A stretch of 62,906 nucleotides of DNA, filler included, from Platydemus manokwari (lineage: Eukaryota), in NCBI GenBank assembly GCA_037951405.1. It is 6 parts of 6 records of this genome, joined end to end, with 100 filler letters (N's around TTAATTAATTAA, not from the genome) between each part and the next. Parts side by side here need not be neighbours in the genome. Positions count along the whole stretch, not along the records: positions 9,218 to 23,233 come from JBBMOY011551411.1; 5 more parts are not named here. The stretch is one strand, 5' to 3'. The translations under genes and the position numbers were made by a program. Shown here piece after piece: positions 9,218-23,233 of the stretch. The notes under the pieces are model-generated. The model was given only the letters and a program-made list of their open reading frames with translations, did not search any database and was not told where the DNA came from. The stretch's first letter is position 1; the number at the start of each line of letters is the position of its first letter.

Positions 9218-9326
9218 AGAAGGAATATTTGTTTAAATAATATTTAATATGAAAATATATTTTTTTATACTTAGTTATGAGTTGTGAATATAATTTAAAA
9301 AGCGATGAAGTGTTAGCCACTAACAG

Positions 9327-10099
9327 ATCTGAAAGTTATAGCTGAAACGTTTGAAAAAAATTACCAGCCTATTTATTATTTGGTCAATAGAAAAAGTAAG
9401 ATTTTAGAAAACGCTTTTAACAAATGTGATCTGATATCACCGGAAGAAATGAAAAGGTTAGAAAATATTCAAAATGGAAACCAAAATGTCTTCCAAAAGA
9501 AAACACGTATTTCCGACGAGACTAAATTGAAAGCTCTTGAAATGTATCAAAAGGGTATCTCATTGCAAGCGATTGCAGATAATTTTCAAACTTCTTATAC
9601 CAACGTTTGGTATTGGGTAAAACATTAAACTAATTTATTTGAAAAAGTGTCTAAAAATAATGATCAGATCACACTGGAAGAATTGAAAAGATTAGAAAAT
9701 GTTGTTAATGGAAACAGGCTTGACTTACCAACGAAAAGGTACAAAGTCTCCACCGATAATAAATTGAATTTCATTGAAATGGATGGATTAGCTCTCCAAG
9801 CAAAAGCGTCTTTTAAAAGCGTTGTCAAGAATGATTATAATTTCTTAGAAAATGGCATAAAGCACAATGATCAGATATCATTAAAGGATGGATCTGAATG
9901 TTTCGATTTGTCTGTAAATTTTATTAAATATGAAAGTGTATTGTTTGATGAACAGATAACAATAAACGAAAATGAAATGCAAGGATATTTTAATAGAAAA
10001 GAAAATACAAAAAGGAAGATAATGGACGCTGAAAATACAGATGAATTCAAGAAAATACGACTTGAATTTCCTATAAATATTAAATTGGAAGAAAAGTAA
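9327..10099 (+). pseudogene. Tandem-HTH array gene, paralog A (5'-truncated, in-frame TAA)
   Basis: ORFs 9380-9628 and 9647-10099 are in one frame, separated by a single TAA (9626-9628; AGA in paralog B). Reads DLKVIAETFEKNYQPIYYLVNRKSKILEN... then TRISDETKLKALEMYQKGISLQAIADNFQTSYTNVWYW, and ends ...KKIRLEFPINIKLEEK like paralog B. Confidence 0.85.
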
Positions 10100-11810
10100 T
10101 TGCAATGCTCTAATAGAGTATTGATATTTGGTAAATTACTTTAATTGTGTCACTTTAATCGAAATATTTAACTTAATTTGATAAATTTTAACTTATTCAC
10201 TGTGTTATTTAAGTTATTATGAAAGCTTTGATTTGAAAATAGAATGTTATACTTCACCAATGTTATTCGAAAGATTCTTAGTTATAAATACATTATTAAA
10301 TCATTTCAACGAAATTGAAATATAATTTTCATCTCTAAAATAGTTTTAGTATTTGAAAGAAAACATGAAATATTCAACATATATAAATTTACCGTTAAAC
10401 TTTAGAAAGAATGTCTTTTGAATTAATTTCCCAATTATGTAATTTAAATTATATAATTTTTTTAGATTTAATGTAAAATTAATTTTATGTCATCACAAAT
10501 CTGAAAAAACTTTTCACTTTTACCATGTTAATTTTAAATGTTGATTAGGATTAAAAAGAAACAGAAAAATAATAAATATTATAAAATATGTCAAAGTATA
10601 TTTTGTCAGGGGGATTTTCAATTCTTATCCGAATAATTCTACATGATTTTTGATTTTTTATATATAAAAATTTTTATTATAAACTCTTTACTTGTTTAAA
10701 AATCTTGTAATAATAATCGTATTTTAAATCTTTAATAACACAAACATTTACAATACTTTGTTTTTGAAAAATATTTGCAAAAAATTAGAGTATTTTTTAA
10801 TTTTCTACGAATAACAAAAGATATTTGATAAAAATGCATTACAGTTTATCAAATAATTGAGTTCTTATATATTTAATATTTTAAAAATTCCAGATTGAGT
10901 TTATTTTTCGACCACTATAATTCCTAAAACATTTTTTATCTGTTGATAGAACAAAGATTTTAAAATCGAGTATTGTGTTGATATTTATCATTAATTATTT
11001 GAGATAAAAGAATACTAAGATTTATTAAATTGGTTGCACAAAAAACATAGATGACAATAATTTTAAGTGTAAATGATGTTGTTTTAAAATCCTGATTTTT
11101 TTCAATTTCAATATTTTATTATTTTCAATTATGTAATTTTTAACGAATTATCAAAAGAGATTGTTTAAATAAATCAATAATTTAAAACCCTTTTCAAACA
11201 TAGGATTTTAACACTTTAGATGGATTTGCTTTGAAATATTTGATTCAATTTTCGAGCAACTGATTTGATAACAATACTCGGAATAGATTTTGAATTAATT
11301 TCGCGAGCCATGGTAAAAAACTCGATCTTCACTATTTCTTAAATGTATTGTTTCTGTTTAAATCTTGATTAATAAACTGTATTTGTATAACAACAAACGT
11401 CGTTGTATTGATTTGTGTATATTTTCTGAAAATATATAAAAAATCTCAATAAGTTCATCTCCTGTTCTAGTTAACTTTGAATAAAGGTCAGTATTTAAAG
11501 AATATTTAGAAATTTCACGAAATTCTTCGTCAGGCATTATTATTCAAACCATTAAAATAGTATCTCATGTAGATAAGGATGTACTTTGGATGAATTGATA
11601 TGTGACTTCTTTCTGATAGTACTGATATAAGTTATTTAGTTTTTAATGTTCCCTTGAAAAATTTAAGATATCTCGACACAAATTTCCTCTAAGCATCCAA
11701 TCTGTGAGGCCTTCCCGTTTTGTTATCTTGATTCCATACAATTTTGCCAATTCCTTCAAGAATCGTGAAATCCCATGTTGATGAAACGTTCCCGCCATTA
11801 TGAAATCCCA
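10100..11810. repeat. Downstream flank of paralog A, duplicated as 14082-14900 + 16067-16240 + 16831-16977
   Basis: Colinear matches, e.g. GTAATTGCAATG after both stop codons, CATGGTxAAAxACTCGATCTT at ~11308 and ~14881, GAATATTTAGAAATTTCACGAAATTCTTCGTCAGG at ~11500 and ~16073, and CCATACAATTTTGCCAATTCCTTCAAGAATCGTG at ~11734 and ~16905. Confidence 0.9.
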
Positions 11811-12353
11811 TGTGTTATTAAACATAACTGTAATTATCTAACTACATTTATAATTATAAAGAAATAAATTTAAAAACTCAAATAATTATATACGATTGCC
11901 GTGATTAGAATAGGAACTTGGTTTTGAAGCTATTTTGTCACTATTAGATATCTTAAAAAGGATACTTTTATAGAATTAAAGAATAAATCAAACATAGCAA
12001 TTGTATACATGAATTTATTTTATAAAATTGTCTCATGCACGAAATTTCATTATAACAAAAATCCTTTTTCTTGACTTAAGCCGTAAATTCTTATTCTAAA
12101 AGATTTTAAAAATAAATCGTTTGAAAACTTTTACAAAATAATAATATTAATAGTTAAAAATTAAAGGCAGTTTTAAAGACATTGAAGATTTTTTAAAATA
12201 ATATTGTTCTAAATCATTCTGACGTTATTTTATTAATATTTCTCTATTTATATTTAAAAATAATTTAGACCAATAGTATTATAAAGAAAAGAAATTCTTT
12301 TATTTATTGTTTTTTTTTAAATTGATAATTAATCGTATTATAAAAAGCATATC

Positions 12354-14081
12354 ATGCAAAATATATCAATGGAACATAATAGAGAATCAATTGACATTTA
12401 TAATGAAAAAATTAAGCTAAGCGAGACACGAAATAAATTCGAAACATCTTCTCAGCACATTATGTATTTAGTCAATAATGAAATTAAAGTGTCTGACGAA
12501 ACTGAACAAATAATGACAGAAGAAAATATTGTAAATCAAAATAAAGAAACTGCGCAAAATAAAAGAATTATTTATTCTTATAAAACTAAATTGAAAGCCA
12601 TTGAAATGTATCAAGAAGGATTTACGTTGCACGAAATTGCGAATAAATTTAAAACATCTTTCAATAATGTCTGGTATTGGGTAAATACTAAAAATAAGAT
12701 ATTAGAAAACGCGTTTAATAAATGTAATCAGTTATCATCAGAAGAAATAAAAAAGTTAGAAAATATTAAAAATGAAAAGGTAGATGTCTTACAAAGGAAA
12801 ACACGTATTTCTACCGAGACTAAATTGAAAGCTATTGAAATGTTTCAAAAAGGAATTGATCTTAAAGTTATAGCCGAAACGTTAAAAACAGGTTACAAGC
12901 AAATTTATTATTTAGTCCATAGAGAAAGTAAGATATTAGAAAACGCGTTTAAGAAATGTGATCAGTTATCACCAGAAGAAATGAAAAGGTTAGAAAATAT
13001 TAAAAATGGAAACCGAGATGTCTTCCAAAAAAAACCACGTATTTCCGCCGAGACTAAATTGAAAGCTATTAAAATGTATCAAGAGGGTATCTCATTGAAA
13101 GCGATTGGAAATATTTTGCAAGTCTCCTTCAACCAAGTTAGGTATTTGGTCAATAATAAAAATAAAATATTAGAAAAATTTCTTAAAAGAAGAGATCAGA
13201 TATCACCGGACGAAATGAAAAGGTTAGAAAATATTAAAAATGAAAACCAAAATGTCTTCCAAAAGAAAACACGTATTTCTGACGAGACTAAATTGAAAGC
13301 TGTTGAAATGTATCAAGAAGGATTTACGTTGCAAGAAGTTGCTAATAAATTTGAAACGTCTTACAACTATGTCTGGTGTTGGGTCAATAATAAAAATAAG
13401 ATTTTAGAAAATTTTGTTAAAAGCAGTGATCAGATATCACTGGACGAAATGAAAAGGTTAGAAAATATTAAAAATGGAAACCAAAATCTCTCCCAAAAGA
13501 AAACACGTATTTCTGACGAGACTAAATTGAAAGCTGTTGAAATGTTTCAAGAGGGTATCTCATTGAAAGCGATTGCAGATAATTTTCAAACATCCTTCAA
13601 CCACGTTTGGTATTGGGTAGAAAACAGAAGTAAAATATTTGAAAAAGTTGCTAAAAATAATGATCAGATCTCACTTGAAGAATTGAAAAGATTAGAAAAT
13701 GTTGTAAATGGAAACAGGCGTGAGTTACAAACGAAAAAGTGCAAAGTCTCTACAGATAATAAATTTAATTTTATTGAAATGGATGGATTAGCTTACCAAT
13801 CAAAACCCTGTCAGACAGATTATAAATTATTAGAAAAAGACATAAAACACAATGATCAGATATCATTAAAGGATGGATCAGAAAGTTTCGATTTACCTGT
13901 AAATTTATTGAAATATGAAAGTGTATGGTTTGATGAAATGTTAGTACAAAAGGAAAATGAAACGAAAGGAAATTGTAATAGAAAAAATACTAAGAGAAAA
14001 ATAACTGACACTGAAAATAAAAATGAATTCAAGAAAATACGACTTGAATTTCCTATAAATATAAAATTGGAAGAAATGTAA
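12354..14081 (+). CDS. Intronless 575-aa protein with five tandem 78-aa repeats, each containing a CENP-B-N/psq-like helix-turn-helix (paralog B, intact)
   Basis: Open 1728-bp frame in AT-rich DNA. Repeat starts at 12801, 13035, 13269 and 13503 (period 234 bp), plus one upstream copy. The motif (Y/I)SxETKLKAIEMYQEGxxLxxIAxxFxTSxxxVxxWVxNKxKI resembles the N-terminal HTH of pogo/Tigger/CENP-B proteins. No DDE domain is visible. Confidence 0.9.
   Translation: MQNISMEHNRESIDIYNEKIKLSETRNKFETSSQHIMYLVNNEIKVSDETEQIMTEENIVNQNKETAQNKRIIYSYKTKLKAIEMYQEGFTLHEIANKFKTSFNNVWYWVNTKNKILENAFNKCNQLSSEEIKKLENIKNEKVDVLQRKTRISTETKLKAIEMFQKGIDLKVIAETLKTGYKQIYYLVHRESKILENAFKKCDQLSPEEMKRLENIKNGNRDVFQKKPRISAETKLKAIKMYQEGISLKAIGNILQVSFNQVRYLVNNKNKILEKFLKRRDQISPDEMKRLENIKNENQNVFQKKTRISDETKLKAVEMYQEGFTLQEVANKFETSYNYVWCWVNNKNKILENFVKSSDQISLDEMKRLENIKNGNQNLSQKKTRISDETKLKAVEMFQEGISLKAIADNFQTSFNHVWYWVENRSKIFEKVAKNNDQISLEELKRLENVVNGNRRELQTKKCKVSTDNKFNFIEMDGLAYQSKPCQTDYKLLEKDIKHNDQISLKDGSESFDLPVNLLKYESVWFDEMLVQKENETKGNCNRKNTKRKITDTENKNEFKKIRLEFPINIKLEEM
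12567..13736 (+). repeat. Five tandem 234-bp coding repeats
   Basis: Blocks such as GAGACTAAATTGAAAGCT and GAAAAGGTTAGAAAATATTAAAAATG recur at an exact 234-bp period. Confidence 0.95.
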
Positions 14082-17036
14082 TTGCAATGTTCCAATAGAT
14101 CATTGATATTTGCTAAATTACTTTAATTATGTCACTTCAATCGGAATATTTAAATATAGTTTAGAATAATGTCTTTTGGATATTATAAAATATTATAAAA
14201 TATTTGTTATTATCTCAAATATACGAAAAAATATGTCAAAGTAGATTTTATAAACAAATTCTCAATTCATATCAAAATAATTCTACATGATTTTTGATTT
14301 TGCAAATATAAAATCTTTAATTATAAATAAAGTTTGTAAACTCATTACATGTTTAATAATTTTCTTAAATGTTTAATAACAAAAAAATTAACAATGACTT
14401 TTTTTTAAAAATGATTTCAAATCTTTACAGTATTTTCCAGTTTTCCTCAAATAAAATAAGATGTTTGGATAAATTACATTTTGACTTACATTTATCCATT
14501 TATCAAATATTGAAGTTCTTGTGTATTTAATATTTTATTTCTTACAAATAAGAGATACAAAACTTTATTTTAAAAATTCAAGGTTGAGTTTATTTTGTGA
14601 CCACTACAAATTTTTAATAAGGACAATATTTTTAAAATCGAGTATTGTGTTGATATTTATCATAAATAATTCGAGATAAAAGAATTTTTATAACTTCGAT
14701 ATTTTCAATTATATAATTTTTAACGGATCATCAAATAAGATTGTTTAAATAAAGCGATAATTTAAAACCTGAATTATTCAAAACACTGAATTTTAACATT
14801 TGATTCGATTTTCGAGCAGCAGATCCTAGCTTCAATTCCTTTGATAACATTAACCTCAATAGATGTAGAATTAAACGGGTCATGGTGAAACACTCGATCT
14901 TGATTGTGTTAGCTATTAGTAAAGAACGGATTCAATAAAAAAAACTAACAATTCCAACATGAAAATGTTTTTTTTAAGAAATAAGAGAAAGACGAAATCA
15001 ATTGATGTTTTTGTTGTTTCTCTCATGAAAACCCTCCACAACTACTACTACGACTATATTAATGGTAATTGTAAAATTAAAGTTAGATCCAATTCATCCG
15101 TGACCTTTCACTTTTGGACTCTGAAGGTATTTTCTAACTCACTTTTTTAATCTTGCTTTTGAACATTCAAAATATACTCGACATTTGTCCATTTCTTTTG
15201 CTTGGCTTGACAATCCAAAACCTTTTCCAAATGTCGCACATAAATATCTGTAGTGTCTGCTGCGTTTGTAATTGAAATTTTTTCAGTACTTATTTTCTCA
15301 ATAGAAATTAAGGTTCTAGATGATATTTTCTTTGATTGCCAATAATACTCCTGATCTTCAAAAATTTATCGATAAAGTTGTTGAAATAACGGAATGGGCT
15401 AGTTTACAATAGTGTCCAAACAAATTTGATTTATCACACAAAACCATAATGATGTAATATCTATTAATAATGTAAATATTAAAAGATTGTTGAATAAAGA
15501 ATTTCACATGTATCCTGGTGTCCTTGTTAGTGATAAAAATGATCTCGTGAATTTTAAATTTAATTTTGTATTAGCGGCGGTAAATATCATATTTTTTACG
15601 TAAAAATACTTAAAATCTTTCAAAATTTCAAAGAAAGAAATTTCATAAACTAATCCATCAAATAATGTAAAAAAATGCAATATTTATATTTTACGAAGTA
15701 CGAGTATCTATCAAAGTGCAAATATCACGAATTATTATCAATTTAATTGTTCTAGTAATCTTATTTTGAACCCTATATCTTGTTCTGTTATTAAATTGAC
15801 ATGCCTCTTGAATTTTCAAAAAACTTAACAACGTAAATTATTTTATATAAATAGCAATATCAAGTTGACAGCTTTTTTAGTCAATAAGTTGATTAGATAT
15901 TAAGAGAAAAGGAATATTTTAAATACATCTTTGCAAAATATAGTTGAAAAATATTAAATAACTTTTTGAAAAATTTGTTTTTTTAAACGAATCGTAAGGA
16001 AAAGATGTAATAAAGTTTTATTAAAGCAAAATTATAATACAATGAATGAGTAATAATAATTCAGAGTTTAAAGAATATTTAGAAATTTCACGAAATTCTT
16101 CGTCAGGAATATCATTATTAATCAAACCGCAAAAATAGTATTTAAAGTAGATAATGATGTACTTTGGATGAATTGATATGTAACTTCTTTTTGATAGTAC
16201 TGGTATAAGTTATTTAGTTTTTAATGTTCTCTTGCAAAAGGTAATGATTATATTTCATTGAAATTAAGAAAGTTATTAATTTTGTAAAGATCACATAATA
16301 AATTACAATTTTTGATTAAATTATTTATTAATAACTTATCTTCAGACATAATATTATCAAGTTATGTTTCAATATTTCAATATTTATTGTACTTCAGAAT
16401 ATTTGAAGGGTCTTTATTTGTAATTTTGCTTTTGTGTAATATATATAATATCATAACAGTATATTTTTATAAATTCTATAATATGACCAGAGAGTCGAGC
16501 TTACATTATTACCCAACAATTACATTTTAGTGTTATAAAATAAAATTTAAAATAAAATCCAATGAAACCGTGCAATCTGGTATGTCACTATGGGTTTATT
16601 TCAATACAAACACGCACTACCGAAACCTGATGCGTACAAACCTGTTAAAAGACTCACATTACTTTGTTATTAGTCACCAATCGATGTTATCAATCAAAAT
16701 AGAATCGGGAATAATAAAGATTTGAATAATTTGCACTTATTATATTTAACTATCTCAAGAATAGTGGCATTATTGTAATACCTATTTAAACAAATCTCAA
16801 ACTAAATTATTACTTGAAATTATGTTTATGAATTTAAGATATCTCGACACAAATTTTCTCTAAGTATCCAATCTGAGAGGCCCTCCTGTTTTGTTATCTC
16901 GATCCCATACAATTTTGCCAATTCCTTCAAGAATCGTGTAATCCCATGTTGATAAAACGTTCACGCCATTATGAAATAATCAGGAAAGCAAAACCGAAAT
17001 CGCTATTAGCGACCATTTCGAATTTTGGTAGAATAA

Positions 17037-17730
17037 TCATATACTACTATTCATATACGTAACCATAACCATGATGGTCAAATATGTCTTATATCCTTTG
17101 CCAATTTTAATTTTATACTTGAAAATTCTCACTCTATCTAGAACTTTATATTTTGAGTTATTATTTAAATCATTATTAATATTATTCCATCCCTTTATTT
17201 TTTCTTTTATTATTTCATGGTTTTTGCTTGCGTCTACAGGAGTAACCCCAATATTTGAATGAATTTTATTATTATATTTTTTTAACAACACTTTGCAATA
17301 AATTATAATTCCATTTTGATTTCTCTCAACCGTAAAATGTTTCCACAAAATATTTTTTAAAGTTCTAATAAATATTTCTGCAAAAACAAAGTGAGTCATT
17401 TAAAAAAATAATTATATTCTTTATATTTAATATTATTTTGTTTAAATATTGTTGTCGGAATGAGATATTGCGATACCAGTTTAACCGAAATATTCTTGGA
17501 AATATGTTAATGTAATGAATGTAATACATAGTAATACATTTCTATGTTGATATTGACATTGTTTTAGTTGTCATAGTTTTAATTAAATTAAATACTAGTG
17601 CTCCAGAATATTCAAAATTAAGTTTGAATATATTCGTTTCACATTAACCAATAAAATTATTACGAATAAAATTAATTCTACATCACGAATTATTTGAACT
17701 ATTTTAATTGTTTCAGGCTCATGTAAATGT
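17037..17730 (-). mobile_element. Polinton/Maverick retroviral-type integrase relic
   Basis: AEIFIRTLKNILWKHFT...YNNKIHSNIGVTP...KYKVLDRVRIFKYKIKIGKGY matches the Maverick integrase C-terminal pattern (AERFNRTLK...YNN..HSSI..TP...KFKVGD.VRISK.K..F.KGY). The upstream part is decayed (LHEP near 17725). Confidence 0.85.
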
Positions 17731-19099
17731 GACTAACTAACAATTGTTAATGCTTGATAAGTTATAAGTAATATCAAGCTCATCAAATTATTTTGCTAAT
17801 TAAATCCATCATATGAATAACAATTCTTAGCCTAATCATAATCTTCGATCATTTAGAGATTCGATTTGCCTGAAAAAAGTAGTCACTGGGTAATAAAAAT
17901 ATCGAACAGAGAATCTAGGAACCAGTTTGAGAATTTTTATTGAAGTGAATTTTATGAATTGAACATAATATGAAATTGAAAATGAAATTTATTAAACAAT
18001 TAAATTGATAACCTCTTAAAATTGGATTTTAAATTTTCAGATTTCATTCAATAAATATGGTGTTAGCGCACACTTTAAAAATCTCAAAGATTCGAATTGA
18101 AATTATTCAACATGTTTTCCTAATAATAACATCACATAAACTTATGGATTATTATTTTATTAAAGAATATAATTAAATAAACTGTTTATAATTTTACGAC
18201 AATTTAAAACTATCATTTGGGACCTATTTTTGGCTAAATTTTGGACCAATTCTTCTAAATAAATTTATAATAAAAATATAAATTAAACGATAAATTCTTA
18301 TTGACTGTTTAATAAAACAATCAGTGATTAAATAAAATAACAATAATAATAACAATTATTACCTCAGATGAAGTTCACTGTATTGTAAGTTCATTGTTTT
18401 GATATTTTGTGCGGCTCATTAATTGTGGGTTTTTTAAGATATTTTCTGTTGAACAATTCAAAGAGACAGAATTCTTTATTTTGCAAAATATTCAGATTAA
18501 ACAATAATTATAATTCATTTAGTAAATAAAAATAGTTTCAATTAAATTTTAATAACTATTTAAATATTAATTTTACGTTACAAATAAATGTTTCAAATAA
18601 AATAGCTCATTTTCCGATTTTTGTTGAGAAATTTTAATTTTATTTTGTTAAAATACTGTTGGGATAAACATCAGCATTATATAGTATAAAAAACAAACAT
18701 TATATAGTATAAAATACAACAACATTATATTAAAAATGAGGATAATACTCCATTATTATAATAGTCCATTATTTGAAAATAATTAACAATTAAATAATAT
18801 ACCATGTTCTATTATTAGATTAACAAAATAGTTATTCTAAAAATACAATGATAAAAAATTAGGATTTAAAATGGCAATAAATAAATAAATAAATGGAATC
18901 ACTGAAATTTGAAGATAAAAAGGGCAAAAAATAAATAAATGGAAAATTAATTTGAAAATAGAAATAAAAAACAACAAAAATAAACCACGAAAAATAAATT
19001 AATAAAAGAAAAAGTTTTAAAGCAAGTAAAAATTGAAAGAAACACAATTTTTCTAATATACTATACAACGAATCTTTCAAATCCAAACGAAATTAAGAA

Positions 19100-19476
19100 A
19101 ACTCTAATTAAGAGGAAATCGATCATTATTGTCAAAAATTAAGCATTATTGTCAAACTATTATCTTGGAATCAACAATTTTGCGAATCGTATGAATTCCC
19201 AAAAGGATAATTACCATTATTGACGATTATCTACAATTGACGGAGGAAATAAATTATTTCAGTCTCTGTGAACAATCCATTAGTCACGAAGAAGATAAAA
19301 TATCTATAAATTATCTAATTTCATATCTAAGTTCAAGCAATAAAACTGGTATAAAAACACAAAGGAACAGAAGAAGAAGAGAAAAACTATATAACTCTGA
19401 ATTGTTTGTTCAACTCCTCACATTGGCATCTCCAATACTAATTCTATTCGACAAAATCAAGAATACTGCTTTCTGA
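19100..19476 (+). mobile_element. Probable decayed Polinton small basic (core/pX-like) protein
   Basis: FCESYEFPKG*LPL followed (across frameshifts) by a basic stretch and LFVQLLTLASPILILF. This resembles, from memory, the ICEC..N.LKGN.PL...GGFL..LL..PIL small protein of Mavericks/adintoviruses, and it lies between the integrase and pPolB relics. Confidence 0.4.
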
Positions 19477-20467
19477 AAACTTAAGGAAAAACGGGAAAAT
19501 AGTAAGCCTTATTATACAGTAATACTTTTCTTGTTGAGAAATATTTTATTGTTCAAAAATCTTTTATAAATTAACCATATTCTTTAACTTGAATACGTAT
19601 CATTTTAATCTATGATAAACATTATTGCATATTTAATATCAGTGAATTTGTCTACTATTTGAGTTAAATTACGTAATGTCATTTATAGCTGAATTGATAA
19701 AATCAATAAACACATTATTTCTCATAAGCTTGTGCTATAGAAATGTTCGGTTGGATACTAATGCAGCTTGCTCAAAATTATAATTCCTCTATAAGTACAT
19801 TTCTATATAGCTTATTAGGTTTATCGACGTACAAATTTTATAAAGCCTTAATTTAAAGTTACTTAGAAAGAGTAATCATTTATAAAATCAAAGCTATAAA
19901 CAACTGTATACAGGTATCATTTGCGTTAGTATAATCGACACGTTTTGAACAGCTTAATTCTTAAAATGGTTTGAATTGTTATCTTTTAAAAATGTCATTT
20001 TGAAGAAACGTGATTTTGTAAAAATCTTTCTATAAAAGAGTCTTTGACAACAGCATGTCAGTAAAAGAGGATTTTATCTATATTTTAATTACCAAAACAA
20101 TAATACTAAATGTCACAAAATTGATAATCATTTATTTTGAAATTAGATACCGAACACTCACTATTATTGATTATGATAATGTGTATATGAATCAACTCTT
20201 TCGTTTATAATTATAATTTACCTGATTTCTACTTTAATAATACAATCACAATGAAAAAATTGAATTTCAGTTGATAGAAGATATCAAATAAAAAAATTAG
20301 AACGAGTACCAACATTTTTAAATATTCCTATATTTCTACAAAATAATCAATTATTAGTAACTCGTATTTCGACAGATAAAAATTAAGAAACAACAGAATA
20401 GAAAATTAAGAAAAAAATAAAAACAGGAAAATCACAAAACCAAAATATGAAAACCCTATTAAAAAAA

Positions 20468-21950
20468 ACTTATAAATGCCAAATTTTCGATACGATGTTT
20501 AAAGTGATTCATGCTCTAAAAGTTCATGAAAAATCCAAAAAACATATTGCGAAATATAACGCTTTTATTAATATTTAAAACAATAATAAAACAATAGATA
20601 ACAGCAATACAATTAATGAAATTTCGTTTTCATCAAATATGGGTAATACTTATAAAACCCATAAAATTAAAATAAAAATCTCAACCAACTCAGAAAGATA
20701 ATTTATCATATTTCAGAAGAGTTTAAGGAAATATTAAAATTTCTTAATAAATATCTAGAACATAAATTTCAAAAAATGATCAAAATATTATTACAAAAAA
20801 TAAATCCACATACTGAAGAAATTTAATATACAACTATAAAATTATTTACAGATCATATATTAAAAATTGGATTGGAGAATATTATGGGTGACGACCTAGT
20901 AAATAATTTAAGATTTCTCCGAACACTGAGATAATGATTAAATGAGAGTTCAAGAAAGTGGATGGAGTATATTTGAATTATGTAATATAATAGTAAATAT
21001 TTCAAGTGTAAATGTTTTTTTAGAAGTAATTACTTACCCCTTACAGTTGTCTCTAATAACATAATAAATATGCAAAACTATGATAACAAATGTTTCTTTT
21101 TTTCAGTATTAGCCATTTTATATCCAATAAAAGGATACAGACGTGCAAATAGTGCAAGCCATTATAAAAAATATTTTGATAAATTAAATCTTGAACAAAT
21201 ATCTTTTCCAACACCTTTAAATGATATTAAAAAATTTCATAGAAAGAATAATGTTTATGGAATTAAAGTAAATGGAAATGGAAATAAGAATTACCAATTA
21301 TTTCCAATCTATATTTCCAAGAAAGAACAATATCCTCAAGATATTAAACTTTCATATTTAGAAAATAATGGAGTAACGCTCTATGCTTTCATTAAAAATT
21401 TCAATTGACTAATGCAGGGACAACTAACTTATAAATGAAATTCAAACCAAAGATTAAATTTTTGTGATAAATGTTGTTATTATTTTGTAACAGAAAATAA
21501 CTTTGAAAATCATTAGAGAATATTTAGAAAAAATGGTGAGGTAATCTCACGATTGTTAAGCCCAGCCAACATAATAATAAACGATGTTCGGTCTATGGCA
21601 ATATCTTAAAATGTATTAATTATAACCATCAAATACCAGTTTCTTTTATAATTATTGCTGATATAGAATGTGTGAATATCAAAAGGTAAAGCAACAAAGG
21701 TTTTAACTAATCAAATACTCATTTGAATTTATTTAAAATATATTTTAAGCTATTCAGAAATAATAGAAAACGAGAATAAATTATTTCAAGAAGAAAACTG
21801 CGTGCAAGAGTTTCTTAAATAGATAGAAGATAATGAAAATAAATTTGAAATTAATCTGAACGAACAAGACAAAATAAACTTTAATAATTCAACTAATTGT
21901 ACTGATTGTAATAAAATCTTTTCTGGTGATAAATAATGATTATTATTTAA
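20468..21950 (+). mobile_element. Polinton/Maverick protein-primed DNA polymerase B, N-terminal relic
   Basis: Degenerate C2H2 finger (YKCQIFD...HEKSKKH), VQESGWSI, NMQNYDNKCFFFSVLAILYP, LNLEQISFPTPLNDIKKF, FCDKC, PVSFIIIADIEC (exonuclease-I-like YADFE) and TNCTDCNKIF. Multiple stops and frameshifts. Confidence 0.85.
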
Positions 21951-21954
21951 AGAA

Positions 21955-22480
21955 AATAAGTTAGGAAATGTGTCGATGATACGAGTAAGATAATACAAAA
22001 AATGTCTAAAAGCAGTGAACAGATATGACCGGAACAAATGAAAGATTAGAAAATATTATTAACAAGCGAGATTTACGAAAAAGAAAATGTGAAGTTACTA
22101 AAGATAATAAATTTAAATCTATCGAAATGGATAGAGATGCGACGGCGTTGCAAGCCATTGCAGAAAAATCGAAATTTTCTTTCAAAACAATTTTTTAGGA
22201 AAATAGTAAATTATCAGAAATAGGTAATGATAATGAATATTTGTCTTTACTTGCAAATTTAATTTAAAAAGAAAATAAATTGTTTAATGAAACCAAACCA
22301 TTGGAATTGATTATTGATGAAATGGAAAGAAAATTGCTTGGAAAACCTATTTTATTAGCATTTAGTAACAATGCTAGAAAAGAAAATAAAAACAAGAAAA
22401 ATATATAGCATTGAAAATCTAAATGAATTGAAGGAAATACGACTTAAATTTTCTTTAAATTTAAAATTGGAGTTATTTAA
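21955..22480 (+). pseudogene. Tandem-HTH array gene, paralog C (decayed 3' part)
   Basis: VRKCVDDTSKIIQKMSKSSEQI*PEQMK/RLENIINKRDLRKRKCEVTKDNKFKSIEMD...ALQAIAEK and C-terminal ELKEIRLKFSLNLKLE are homologous to the last repeat and tail of paralog B; the 3' flank AATAGATCA is also shared. Confidence 0.8.
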
Positions 22481-23233
22481 TTACAATAATGCAATAGATC
22501 ACTAATTAATTTGTTGTTTTTCTAAAAATTTTAATCAGTTTTAATACAAATATTAATCTTTAATGCTTGAATAAAAGTTTTTTTCAAATTTTTTTTCCAA
22601 ATTTTAAATGCGAGATATCAACAGGAGTTTTATATAGAAATAGAATATATTTGATGATTTATAGATGTTTTTTTAAGAAAATGAAAGATTTTCGTCTATC
22701 GGATTGGAAATTCAAGCTTGGGTTGTAGCATACTATCAGAATATATGCTGTTAAGCTGAAGCATCACAACAATATGACTTTCTCATTGGATAACCTGTAT
22801 GACAAAGGCGTTTCAAACTGAAATTCTCTTTTAATTTATAAAAAAATACATAATTAAAATCTATGAAAATTCAATCAAATGGTGCAAGAGATTTTTCTGA
22901 AAATTGATGTGATGATTTGATGTTATCTTTAATAATTTTTATTTTACTCGATTAAGTAAGTCAAGTCAACTAAATCGAGTCAACTTACTGAAGACTTTTT
23001 ATTGCAGAATATGATGGTGAATGTAATTATTTCTCTAAAAATTGAAGAGAGTCGAAATGAAATGTACTTATTTGTAAAGTTCACCCAAATAATTTGAGTA
23101 GTTGTTGAAAGGCTATATTTTTTTCAACCATTTTTACAATTTTTATCAGTTTTATCTATAATAATACTTTTAATTTTTTATTTTTTAAAATAACATCTCT
23201 TTATTGTTTCATTAGATCTTTCTATTTTAAATT

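What the first reader, a model, noticed from the sequence alone, without database searches (positions are those of the whole stretch)
12567..13736. Hypervariable residues at the predicted recognition helix, reminiscent of TALE RVDs
Seen: the segment after the HTH turn reads TSF-NN-VWYW, TGY-KQ-IYYL, VSF-NQ-VRYL, TSY-NY-VWCW and TSF-NH-VWYW in the five modules, and KNY-QP-IYYL and TSY-TN-VWYW in paralog A. The central dipeptide differs in every module, while ETKLKA and EMKRLENIKN are near-identical even at DNA level. Modules are also mosaic: 1 and 4 share CAAGAAGGATTTACGTTGCA, and 3 and 5 share CAAGAGGGTATCTCATTGAAAGCGATTG. Established: the first turn of HTH helix 3 contacts bases in the major groove. 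Inference: diversifying selection on specificity residues against a homogenised scaffold (as in PRDM9 or KRAB-ZF arrays), possibly forming a recognition code.
Basis: partly seen in the sequence, partly recalled or inferred. Interest (0 to 1): 0.82.

Follow-up and report, generated by a model that had tools for sequence, protein, structure and literature searches.

The report
Fast-evolving tandem helix-turn-helix array gene
An intact 575-residue gene in an AT-rich animal genome strings five 78-residue CENP-B/pipsqueak-type DNA-binding modules together and belongs to a large, fast-evolving family; the DNA-reading face of each module changes fastest, but there is no TALE-like code and no homogenised scaffold.

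Summary
ORF 12354-14081 (+) encodes five in-register 78-aa modules, and every quoted peptide and DNA string is present.

Each module is a CENP-B_N/HTH_23-type three-helix HTH followed by two more helices (AF2 pLDDT 89). The nearest folds are the Brinker and CENP-B DNA complexes. Modules are joined by disordered basic linkers, so the array is beads on a string, not a solenoid.

The genome is an animal's, about 0.9 Gb, with many Wnt loci. It holds dozens of paralogs with 2-7 modules, many of them broken.

Across 100 modules, the three most variable columns (34, 38, 36) lie on the exposed face of helix 3. Codon likelihood gives dN/dS of about 1.0-1.2 for that face, 0.34-0.39 for the rest and about 0.55 for the linker. 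Only column 34 is nominally above 1 (p 0.012-0.04, uncorrected).

Modules group by type across paralogs rather than by gene, and only 23 of 78 columns are invariant within this gene. The scaffold is therefore not homogenised, although some mosaic exchange tracts are significant.

Verdict: a lineage-specific expansion of transposase-derived multi-HTH proteins, a new variant of a known kind. A recognition code and diversifying selection are not shown.

The parts
12354..14081 (+). Intact 575-aa ORF (stop at 14079-14081): degenerate N-terminal module, five full HTH modules, degenerate sixth module, and a conserved basic/acidic tail
   Evidence: Pfam HTH_23 1.7e-24 (5 stretches), HTH_28, CENP-B_N above cut-off. 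dN/dS 0.49-0.70 against intact paralogs.
12354..12560 (+). N-terminal region (aa 1-69), weakly module-like (degenerate module 0)
   Evidence: module HMM hit with E 3.5e-6 over aa 3-68 of the ORF.
12561..12794 (+). Module 1 (aa 70-147), type A; helix-3 codons 34-38 at 12660-12674 (FNNVW)
12795..13028 (+). Module 2 (aa 148-225), type B; helix-3 codons 34-38 at 12894-12908 (YKQIY)
13029..13262 (+). Module 3 (aa 226-303), type D; helix-3 codons 34-38 at 13128-13142 (FNQVR)
13263..13496 (+). Module 4 (aa 304-381), type A; helix-3 codons 34-38 at 13362-13376 (YNYVW); this is the module that was modelled
   Evidence: AF2 pLDDT 89; helices 7-18, 23-29, 34-42, 44-54, 60-71
13497..13730 (+). Module 5 (aa 382-459), type C (terminal type, NH conserved in paralogs); helix-3 codons 34-38 at 13596-13610 (FNHVW)
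13731..14078 (+). Degenerate sixth module plus C-terminal tail (aa 460-575) with a basic KRK patch; conserved among paralogs; no Pfam family
   Evidence: tail dN/dS 0.41-0.65; no Pfam hit
9317..10099 (+). Paralog A: 3' part of a tandem duplicate gene, cut by the contig start, with an in-frame TAA at 9626-9628 (probable pseudogene)
   Evidence: (75% identity to aa 365-574, 1 TAA)
9330..11806 (+). First copy of a tandem segmental duplication (gene 3' part plus about 1.7 kb downstream). Its counterpart is 12628-16977, interrupted by insertions
   Evidence: families D1-D11, D13; 83-94% identity for the two-copy families, 70-84% for D1
11815..12120 (+). High-copy repeat lying just upstream of the gene. 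It explains the 'upstream' similarity to otherwise distant paralog loci
   Evidence: summed word depth about 10^3-10^4 against about 50-150 in the gene
21954..22725 (+). Third, degraded family member (C-terminal part; most like locus L019, 83%)
   Evidence: (D2, D6)

Best explanation
The window holds one intact member, and two decayed neighbours, of a large lineage-specific family of nuclear multi-HTH DNA-binding proteins in an AT-rich animal genome. Each 78-aa module is a transposase-derived CENP-B_N/pipsqueak/Brinker-type three-helix HTH with a basic N-terminal arm (KKTRIS), extended by two further helices. Modules are independent domains on flexible linkers. The likely mechanism (inferred) is that each module docks helix 3 in a major groove, so that 5-7 modules together read a long or reiterated target. 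The family evolves by birth and death: tandem and segmental duplication, in-register gain and loss of modules, some inter-module exchange, and many pseudogenes. The hydrophobic core, helices 1, 2 and 5 and most of the linker are under purifying selection. The exposed helix-3 face (columns 34, 36, 38, less so 35) is essentially unconstrained or weakly positively selected, so DNA specificity can drift or diversify between paralogs. Old module types keep their own helix-3 signatures.
For: Architecture. Domain identity: Pfam HTH_23 in 72 of 98 modules, HTH_28 in 49, CENP-B_N in 34 (up to 87 bits in paralog L008). Fold: AF2 pLDDT 89. The best structural matches are Brinker DBD-DNA (Z 6.7, rmsd 2.6, 54 aa), CENP-B-DNA (Z 6.6; Foldseek prob 0.99), IstA HTH and Dan psq. 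Beads on a string. Family size and state: 89 matches in the own genome, ORFs with 2-7 modules, several with stops. Tandem duplication in the window. Module types are shared across paralogs. Selection: global omega 0.38; helix-3 face 0.99-1.20; all other classes 0.27-0.59 and significantly below 1; highest nonsynonymous rates at columns 38 and 34 (2.4 against a mean of 0.38); 42 of 74 sites negatively selected. Independent-pair counts agree. Animal origin: at least 10 Wnt loci on contigs of 27-31% GC. Precedent: species-specific expansions of TE-derived HTH-Psq/CENPB factors in Hydra, molluscs and others (PMC10027918).
Against: No expression evidence: no RNA run holds the gene. DNA binding and nuclear location are inferred from homology only. 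Gene-level dN/dS of 0.5-0.7 and the many broken copies are also compatible with a selfish or decaying family. Structural Z-scores (below 8) are modest for small helical domains. The tree is long (51 substitutions per codon), and recombination between modules can bias site tests. Family sampling is limited to about 45 loci from a very fragmented assembly.
Confidence: 0.6

Rival explanations
1. One reading: an adaptive recognition array in which a homogenised scaffold carries hypervariable specificity residues under diversifying selection (as in PRDM9, KRAB-ZNF or TALE), possibly with a simple residue-to-base code.
For: The helix-3 face is the only class not under purifying selection (omega 1.0-1.2). 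Column 34 has beta/alpha of 2.1-3.2 with p 0.012-0.04 in three data sets. Columns 34, 38 and 36 are the three highest-entropy columns of 75. There are significant mosaic tracts between modules 4-5, 3-5, 2-5 and 1-4. The family is large, fast-evolving and sits among transposon debris.
Against: No test survives correction for 74 sites. The dipeptide 35-36 gives omega 0.49-0.71 (p 0.03 below 1 in the intact copies). Modules are only 50-65% identical and cluster by type across genes, not by gene. Helix-3 signatures are retained within a type (NH in all type C modules). Synonymous divergence in the 'near-identical' blocks is not reduced in pair counts (pS 0.21-0.23 against 0.20 overall). Modules are separated by disordered linkers.
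Confidence: 0.15
2. The family is the cargo or ORF of a mobile or otherwise selfish element. Copy number then reflects transposition rather than host gene duplication, and the HTH array binds the element's own repeats.
For: The modules are transposase-type HTHs. There are dozens of copies, many with stops. Integrase-like and high-copy repeats lie next to several copies. Overall dN/dS is high.
Against: No DDE, integrase or other catalytic domain lies in or fused to any family ORF. There are no terminal inverted repeats or shared termini. The apparent common 5' boundary is the edge of a separate high-copy repeat. The window copies arose by tandem segmental duplication that included non-coding flanks. 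Paralogs differ in module number and are as little as 35-45% identical, unlike a recently active transposon.
Confidence: 0.15
3. The modules no longer bind DNA. The array would be a helical-repeat scaffold for protein or RNA interactions, and helix-3 variability would simply reflect loss of constraint.
For: Omega of about 1 on the helix-3 face is what neutrality predicts. There is no functional data.
Against: The basic N-terminal arm, the G of the turn, and Y39/W40 of helix 3 are strongly conserved, as expected for a working HTH. Helix-3 signatures are retained within module types.
Confidence: 0.07

Closest known systems
Pipsqueak (Psq) and the psq/CENP-B_N/Brinker HTH superfamily (pogo/Tigger transposase N-terminal domain)
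   Same: It has the same type of small three-helix HTH (Pfam CENP-B_N and HTH_23; best folds Brinker, CENP-B and Dan psq). Psq carries its HTH as four tandem ~50-aa repeats (my own knowledge: Lehmann et al. 1998, Siegmund & Lehmann 2002, both cited in PMC6754745). The domain is of transposase origin (PMC1702500).
   Different: Here the unit is 78 aa with two extra helices (44-54, 60-71). There are 5-7 units per protein, no BTB or DDE domain, and dozens of paralogs. Pfam HTH_psq itself was not among the hits. The 78-aa module was not found outside this genome among 1.84 billion representatives.
[quoted passage not shown]
   Same: This is also a species-restricted expansion of pogo-derived HTH proteins in an animal genome, often next to integrase-like sequence.
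   Different: In the passages I read, that survey does not describe long in-register tandem arrays of the HTH or site-specific evolutionary rates.
Myb R1R2R3 and paired domain (PAI+RED)
   Same: These are tandem three-helix HTH units, each placing helix 3 in the major groove of adjacent sites (my own knowledge). Pax and Tc3 appear among the weaker fold hits.
   Different: They have two or three units under strong conservation. They are not an expanding family with a variable number of units.
TALE repeats (RVD code)
   Same: Both are tandem DNA-binding repeats whose differences include residues facing DNA.
   Different: TALE repeats are 33-35 aa, near-identical outside positions 12/13, form a continuous superhelix and read one base each (my own knowledge). 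Here modules are 78 aa, 50-65% identical, and separated by disordered linkers, and each is an HTH that would read several bases.
PRDM9 / KRAB zinc-finger arrays
   Same: Both are large, fast-evolving families in which the DNA-contacting face is the fastest-evolving part and array length changes in register.
   Different: Those arrays show concerted homogenisation and clear omega above 1 at contact residues (my own knowledge). Here modules cluster by type across genes and omega is about 1.

Membership tests
CENP-B_N / HTH_23 (homeodomain-like, transposase-type HTH) | Significant match to the family profile | tested here: met
   Whole protein: HTH_23 85 bits (cut-off 24.6), CENP-B_N 32 bits (cut-off 21.2). 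Single modules: 72 of 98 match HTH_23 and 34 of 98 match CENP-B_N. Paralog L008: CENP-B_N 87 bits.
CENP-B_N / HTH_23 (homeodomain-like, transposase-type HTH) | Three-helix HTH fold resembling solved DNA complexes of the family | tested here: met
   AF2 pLDDT 89. Top of 48,161 chains: Brinker-DNA Z 6.7 and CENP-B-DNA Z 6.6. Foldseek prob 0.99 for 1hlv_A. The Z values are modest.
CENP-B_N / HTH_23 (homeodomain-like, transposase-type HTH) | Sequence-specific DNA binding through helix 3 | not testable with these tools
   Needs PBM, SELEX or a co-structure.
pogo/Tigger transposase (autonomous element) | DDE catalytic domain and terminal inverted repeats | tested here: not met
   No DDE family in the ORF or in nine long paralog ORFs. 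No credible inverted termini.
Pipsqueak family proper | Match to Pfam HTH_psq; BTB domain in the long isoforms | tested here: not met
   HTH_psq is not among the hits at E<=1 for the whole protein or E<=0.01 for single modules. There is no BTB domain.
TALE-like code repeats | Short near-identical repeats with variation confined to two residues | tested here: not met
   55 of 78 columns vary within the gene and pairwise identity is 50-65%.
TALE-like code repeats | Repeats pack into a continuous solenoid | tested here: not met
   The two-module model has pTM 0.46, and linker residues 75-81 have pLDDT below 50. This is a prediction only.
PRDM9/KZFP-type adaptive arrays | Concerted evolution: repeats within a gene are more alike than those between genes | tested here: not met
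   Modules cluster by type across paralogs. Some conversion-like tracts exist.
PRDM9/KZFP-type adaptive arrays | dN/dS above 1 at DNA-contact positions | tested here: inconclusive
   Face omega 0.99-1.20 (not significantly different from 1). Column 34 beta/alpha 2.1-3.2, p 0.012-0.04 uncorrected. Dipeptide 0.49-0.71.

The most novel reading that the evidence does not exclude
This is an animal counterpart of KRAB-ZNF arrays built from HTH modules. It would be a birth-and-death family of 5-7-module CENP-B_N-type arrays whose helix-3 positions 34, 36 and 38 are retuned, partly by positive selection at column 34 and by module shuffling, to track rapidly changing repeats such as transposons or satellites. 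Each module type would contribute a predictable sub-site.
Probability: 0.15. Interest if true: 0.7.

Novelty: new variant of a known kind. Interest (0 to 1): 0.42.

Why it matters
If these proteins are expressed and bind DNA, the family would be a natural set of modular HTH arrays with varied reading heads. That would help in learning how psq/CENP-B-type HTHs specify sequence. It would also be a possible second solution, besides zinc fingers, to recognising fast-changing repeats in animal genomes. The profile search further shows that long tandem arrays of this HTH are common and unnamed in public data, in both bacteria-like and eukaryote-like proteins, so the architecture is under-described. 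As it stands, this is an ordinary lineage-specific expansion with an unusual repeat geometry.

Tried and rejected
1. Word-index protein search with the whole protein found nothing at E<=1e-3. It is limited by length and by low-complexity words.
I did not reconstruct ancestors by any other route. I used independent-pair counts and a pruning-likelihood FEL-like fit that sums over internal states and reproduces iqtree's lnL.
4. The protein-atlas feature search gave only weak leads (scores of 0.80 or below).
5. The top sequence hit in the PDB, 8vd6 'CAP repeat', is a de novo designed repeat protein (PMC12339374). I discarded it as a compositional match.
6. Transposon hypothesis: inverted-repeat scans of three paralog loci gave only AT-rich chance matches. 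The shared 5' boundary turned out to be a separate high-copy repeat.
7. Organism: coded in the run search. Wnt is present, there is a single arthropod cuticle hit, and no actinoporin was found (uninformative). The result is an unnamed non-arthropod animal.
8. Sample look-ups for the nearest outside relatives gave only ENA assembly codes.
9. The exact 20- and 28-nt shared runs alone are not remarkable at 78-79% identity. The mosaic claim rests on the permutation test instead.

Full report
**What is there**

The usable piece (9218-23233) is contig C1551411 of a 911-Mb assembly in 2.0 million contigs. It is 19-30% GC and almost devoid of long ORFs apart from one, 12354..14081 (+), 575 aa. Tandem Repeats Finder reports a 234-nt period, 4.8 copies and 78% matches at 12585-13715. 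A 468-nt period scores slightly higher.

Translation gives five modules of exactly 78 aa (aa 70-459). Paralog A (9317-10096) carries the quoted strings and an in-frame TAA at 9626-9628. A third degraded member lies at 21954-22725.

**What the module is**

Pfam assigns the protein to HTH_23 (1.7e-24, five stretches), HTH_28 and CENP-B_N, among other transposase-type HTH families. Scanned singly, 72 of 98 family modules match HTH_23 and 34 match CENP-B_N. A paralog reaches 87 bits on CENP-B_N.

AlphaFold2 on module 4 with a 98-module alignment gives pLDDT 89 and five helices: 7-18, 23-29, 34-42, 44-54 and 60-71.

An exhaustive structural comparison ranks Brinker DBD-DNA (Z 6.7, rmsd 2.6 Å, 54 aa) and CENP-B-DNA (Z 6.6) first, followed by IstA HTH and the Dan psq domain. 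Foldseek agrees, with prob 0.99 for 1hlv_A. The Z values are modest for a small helical domain, but they agree with the sequence assignment.

A two-module model built on 61 module pairs has well-formed modules but a disordered linker (residues 75-81 have pLDDT below 50) and pTM 0.46. This is beads on a string, not a solenoid.

The C-terminal 116 aa and the N-terminal 69 aa are degenerate modules plus a conserved tail with no Pfam family.

**Family and context**

The protein has 89 matches in its own genome. ORFs carry 2-7 modules, some are intact (up to 716 aa) and several have stops.

In the window, 9330-11806 and 12628-16977 are a tandem segmental duplication that includes non-coding flanks.

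No DDE or other catalytic domain is fused to any member, and no terminal inverted repeats were found. An apparent common 5' boundary is the edge of a separate high-copy repeat at about 11815-12120.

The genome is an animal's. At least ten Wnt loci lie on contigs of 27-31% GC, and there is only one arthropod cuticle-protein hit.

A profile of the module finds 1,996 representatives (204 at E<=1e-10) among 1.84 billion. Nearly all the top hits are unnamed proteins with 4-16 HTH stretches, usually at a 50-60 aa period. None has the 78-aa five-helix module repeated.

**Is variation focused on the dipeptide?**

Within the gene it is not. 55 of 78 columns vary, and five other columns have as many states as column 36.

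Across 100 modules the three highest-entropy columns are 34 (3.51 bits), 38 (3.41) and 36 (3.32). Column 35 ranks 7th, and linker columns 52, 55 and 70 follow closely.

The variable face is i, i+2, i+4, alternating with the conserved core residues V37, Y39, W40 and V41. This is the pattern expected for the exposed side of a recognition helix.

**Selection**

- **Independent-pair counts.** Forty independent nearest-neighbour module pairs give an overall pN/pS of 0.59. The helix-3 face {34,35,36,38} gives 1.05 (bootstrap 0.82-1.32), the linker 50-55 gives 0.83 and helix 1 gives 0.40.
- **Codon likelihood by class.** I used GY+F3X4 on 86 modules. My implementation reproduces iqtree's lnL and the global omega of 0.38. 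The beta/alpha ratio is 1.20 for the face (not different from 1, p 0.375). It is 0.27 for helix 1, 0.36 for helix 2, 0.58 for the helix-3 core, 0.56 for the linker (p 0.0015), 0.31 for helix 5 and 0.45 for the N-terminal arm.
- **Per site.** The highest nonsynonymous rates are at columns 38 and 34 (2.4, six times the mean). Forty-two of 74 sites are negatively selected. Only column 34 has beta above alpha at p<0.05 (p 0.012), which does not survive 74 tests.
- **Robustness.** The results hold for intact ORFs only (face 0.99, rest 0.34, column 34 p 0.04, dipeptide 0.49 with p 0.03 below 1). They also hold for the closer subfamily (face 1.08, column 34 ratio 3.2 with p 0.013).

The DNA-reading face is thus uniquely unconstrained, but positive selection is not demonstrated.

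**Is the scaffold homogenised?**

A module tree groups modules by type across paralogs. Window module 4 groups with L004 module 4 and L002 module 3. Module 5 groups with the last modules of L002 and L004. Module 2 groups with the 'YQxIYY' modules of six genes.

The window gene reads A-B-D-A-C. Type C keeps NH in every paralog seen, type A mostly keeps NN, and type B varies at column 36. The five different dipeptides are therefore largely inherited type signatures.

Synonymous divergence in the conserved blocks is not reduced in pair counts (pS 0.21-0.23 against 0.20). Their DNA identity is explained by amino-acid constraint plus AT-biased codon use.

A GENECONV-like permutation does find over-long runs of shared polymorphisms for module pairs 4-5 (P<2e-4), 3-5 (0.002), 2-5 (0.003) and 1-4 (0.009). 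Some exchange or shuffling between modules is therefore real, and module number changes in register between paralogs.

**Interpretation**

The best reading (confidence 0.6) is a lineage-specific, birth-and-death family of transposase-derived multi-HTH DNA-binding proteins. Their modules bind independently through helix 3, and their reading face drifts or diversifies between paralogs.

Three points remain inferred rather than shown:
- DNA binding itself.
- Nuclear location.
- Expression: no RNA run holds the gene.

Gene-level dN/dS of 0.49-0.70 and the many broken copies keep a selfish-element or decaying-family reading alive (0.15).

The TALE and PRDM9 analogies fail their defining tests: repeat near-identity, a solenoid fold and concerted evolution. 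The closest known things are Pipsqueak's four tandem psq repeats, the CENP-B/pogo N-terminal domain, and the reported animal expansions of such factors.

Novelty: a new variant of a known kind (78-aa five-helix unit, 5-7 in-register units, large family).

**Caveats**

- The assembly is fragmented and family sampling is about 45 loci.
- The tree is long, with saturated synonymous sites.
- Recombination among modules may bias the site tests.
- The structure models are predictions.

Noticed in passing
P0003 (public protein, 465 aa, on a 2.66-Mb contig): A bacterial-looking protein with a signal-peptide-like N-terminus and eight near-identical 54-59-aa HTH repeats. Their differences cluster at the start of helix 3 (TS[PRL][GVED]N[IV]R[NS]W).
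   Followed up: partly
P0002 (773 aa) and the rest of the top 150 hits: Long tandem arrays of this HTH (4-16 units, period about 50-60 aa) are common and unnamed in public metagenome proteins. P0002 combines an ankyrin-like N-terminus with about 12 HTH units.
   Followed up: partly
Loci L041-L046 of the same genome; P0023 and P0028: A second architecture uses the same HTH: one or two modules, a long low-complexity spacer, and a conserved C-terminal helical motif (…S.YF..I..RY.YLE…). It has no Pfam family and also occurs in metagenome proteins.
   Followed up: partly
window 11800-12120: A very high-copy repeat, with summed word depth of about 10^3-10^4 in run X1 against about 50-150 in the gene. 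It is also found upstream of distant paralogs (L021, L048).
   Followed up: partly
window 17037-17399 (-) and 11358-11825 (-); L002:3-521: Integrase-core-like ORF fragments and associated repeats (D4, D7, D11) sit next to family members. This is probably debris of an integrase-bearing element. Pfam found no hit for the 120-aa fragment.
   Followed up: partly
window 20986-21405 (+): A 140-aa open frame (…KCFFFSVLAILYP…) is repeated at 80% identity beside paralog L023. It has no Pfam family and is probably another repeat-borne ORF.
   Followed up: no
window 12419-13876 against 11863-12376 in run X1 (table 8): Exact-match contigs inside the gene have depth 45-75, against about 18-19 for exact contigs just upstream. 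One possibility is that 2-4 near-identical copies are collapsed in the assembly.
   Followed up: no
G000:C33760:3-173: This is the single arthropod cuticle-protein (Chitin_bind_4) hit in an otherwise non-arthropod animal assembly. It may be a contaminant or food organism.
   Followed up: no
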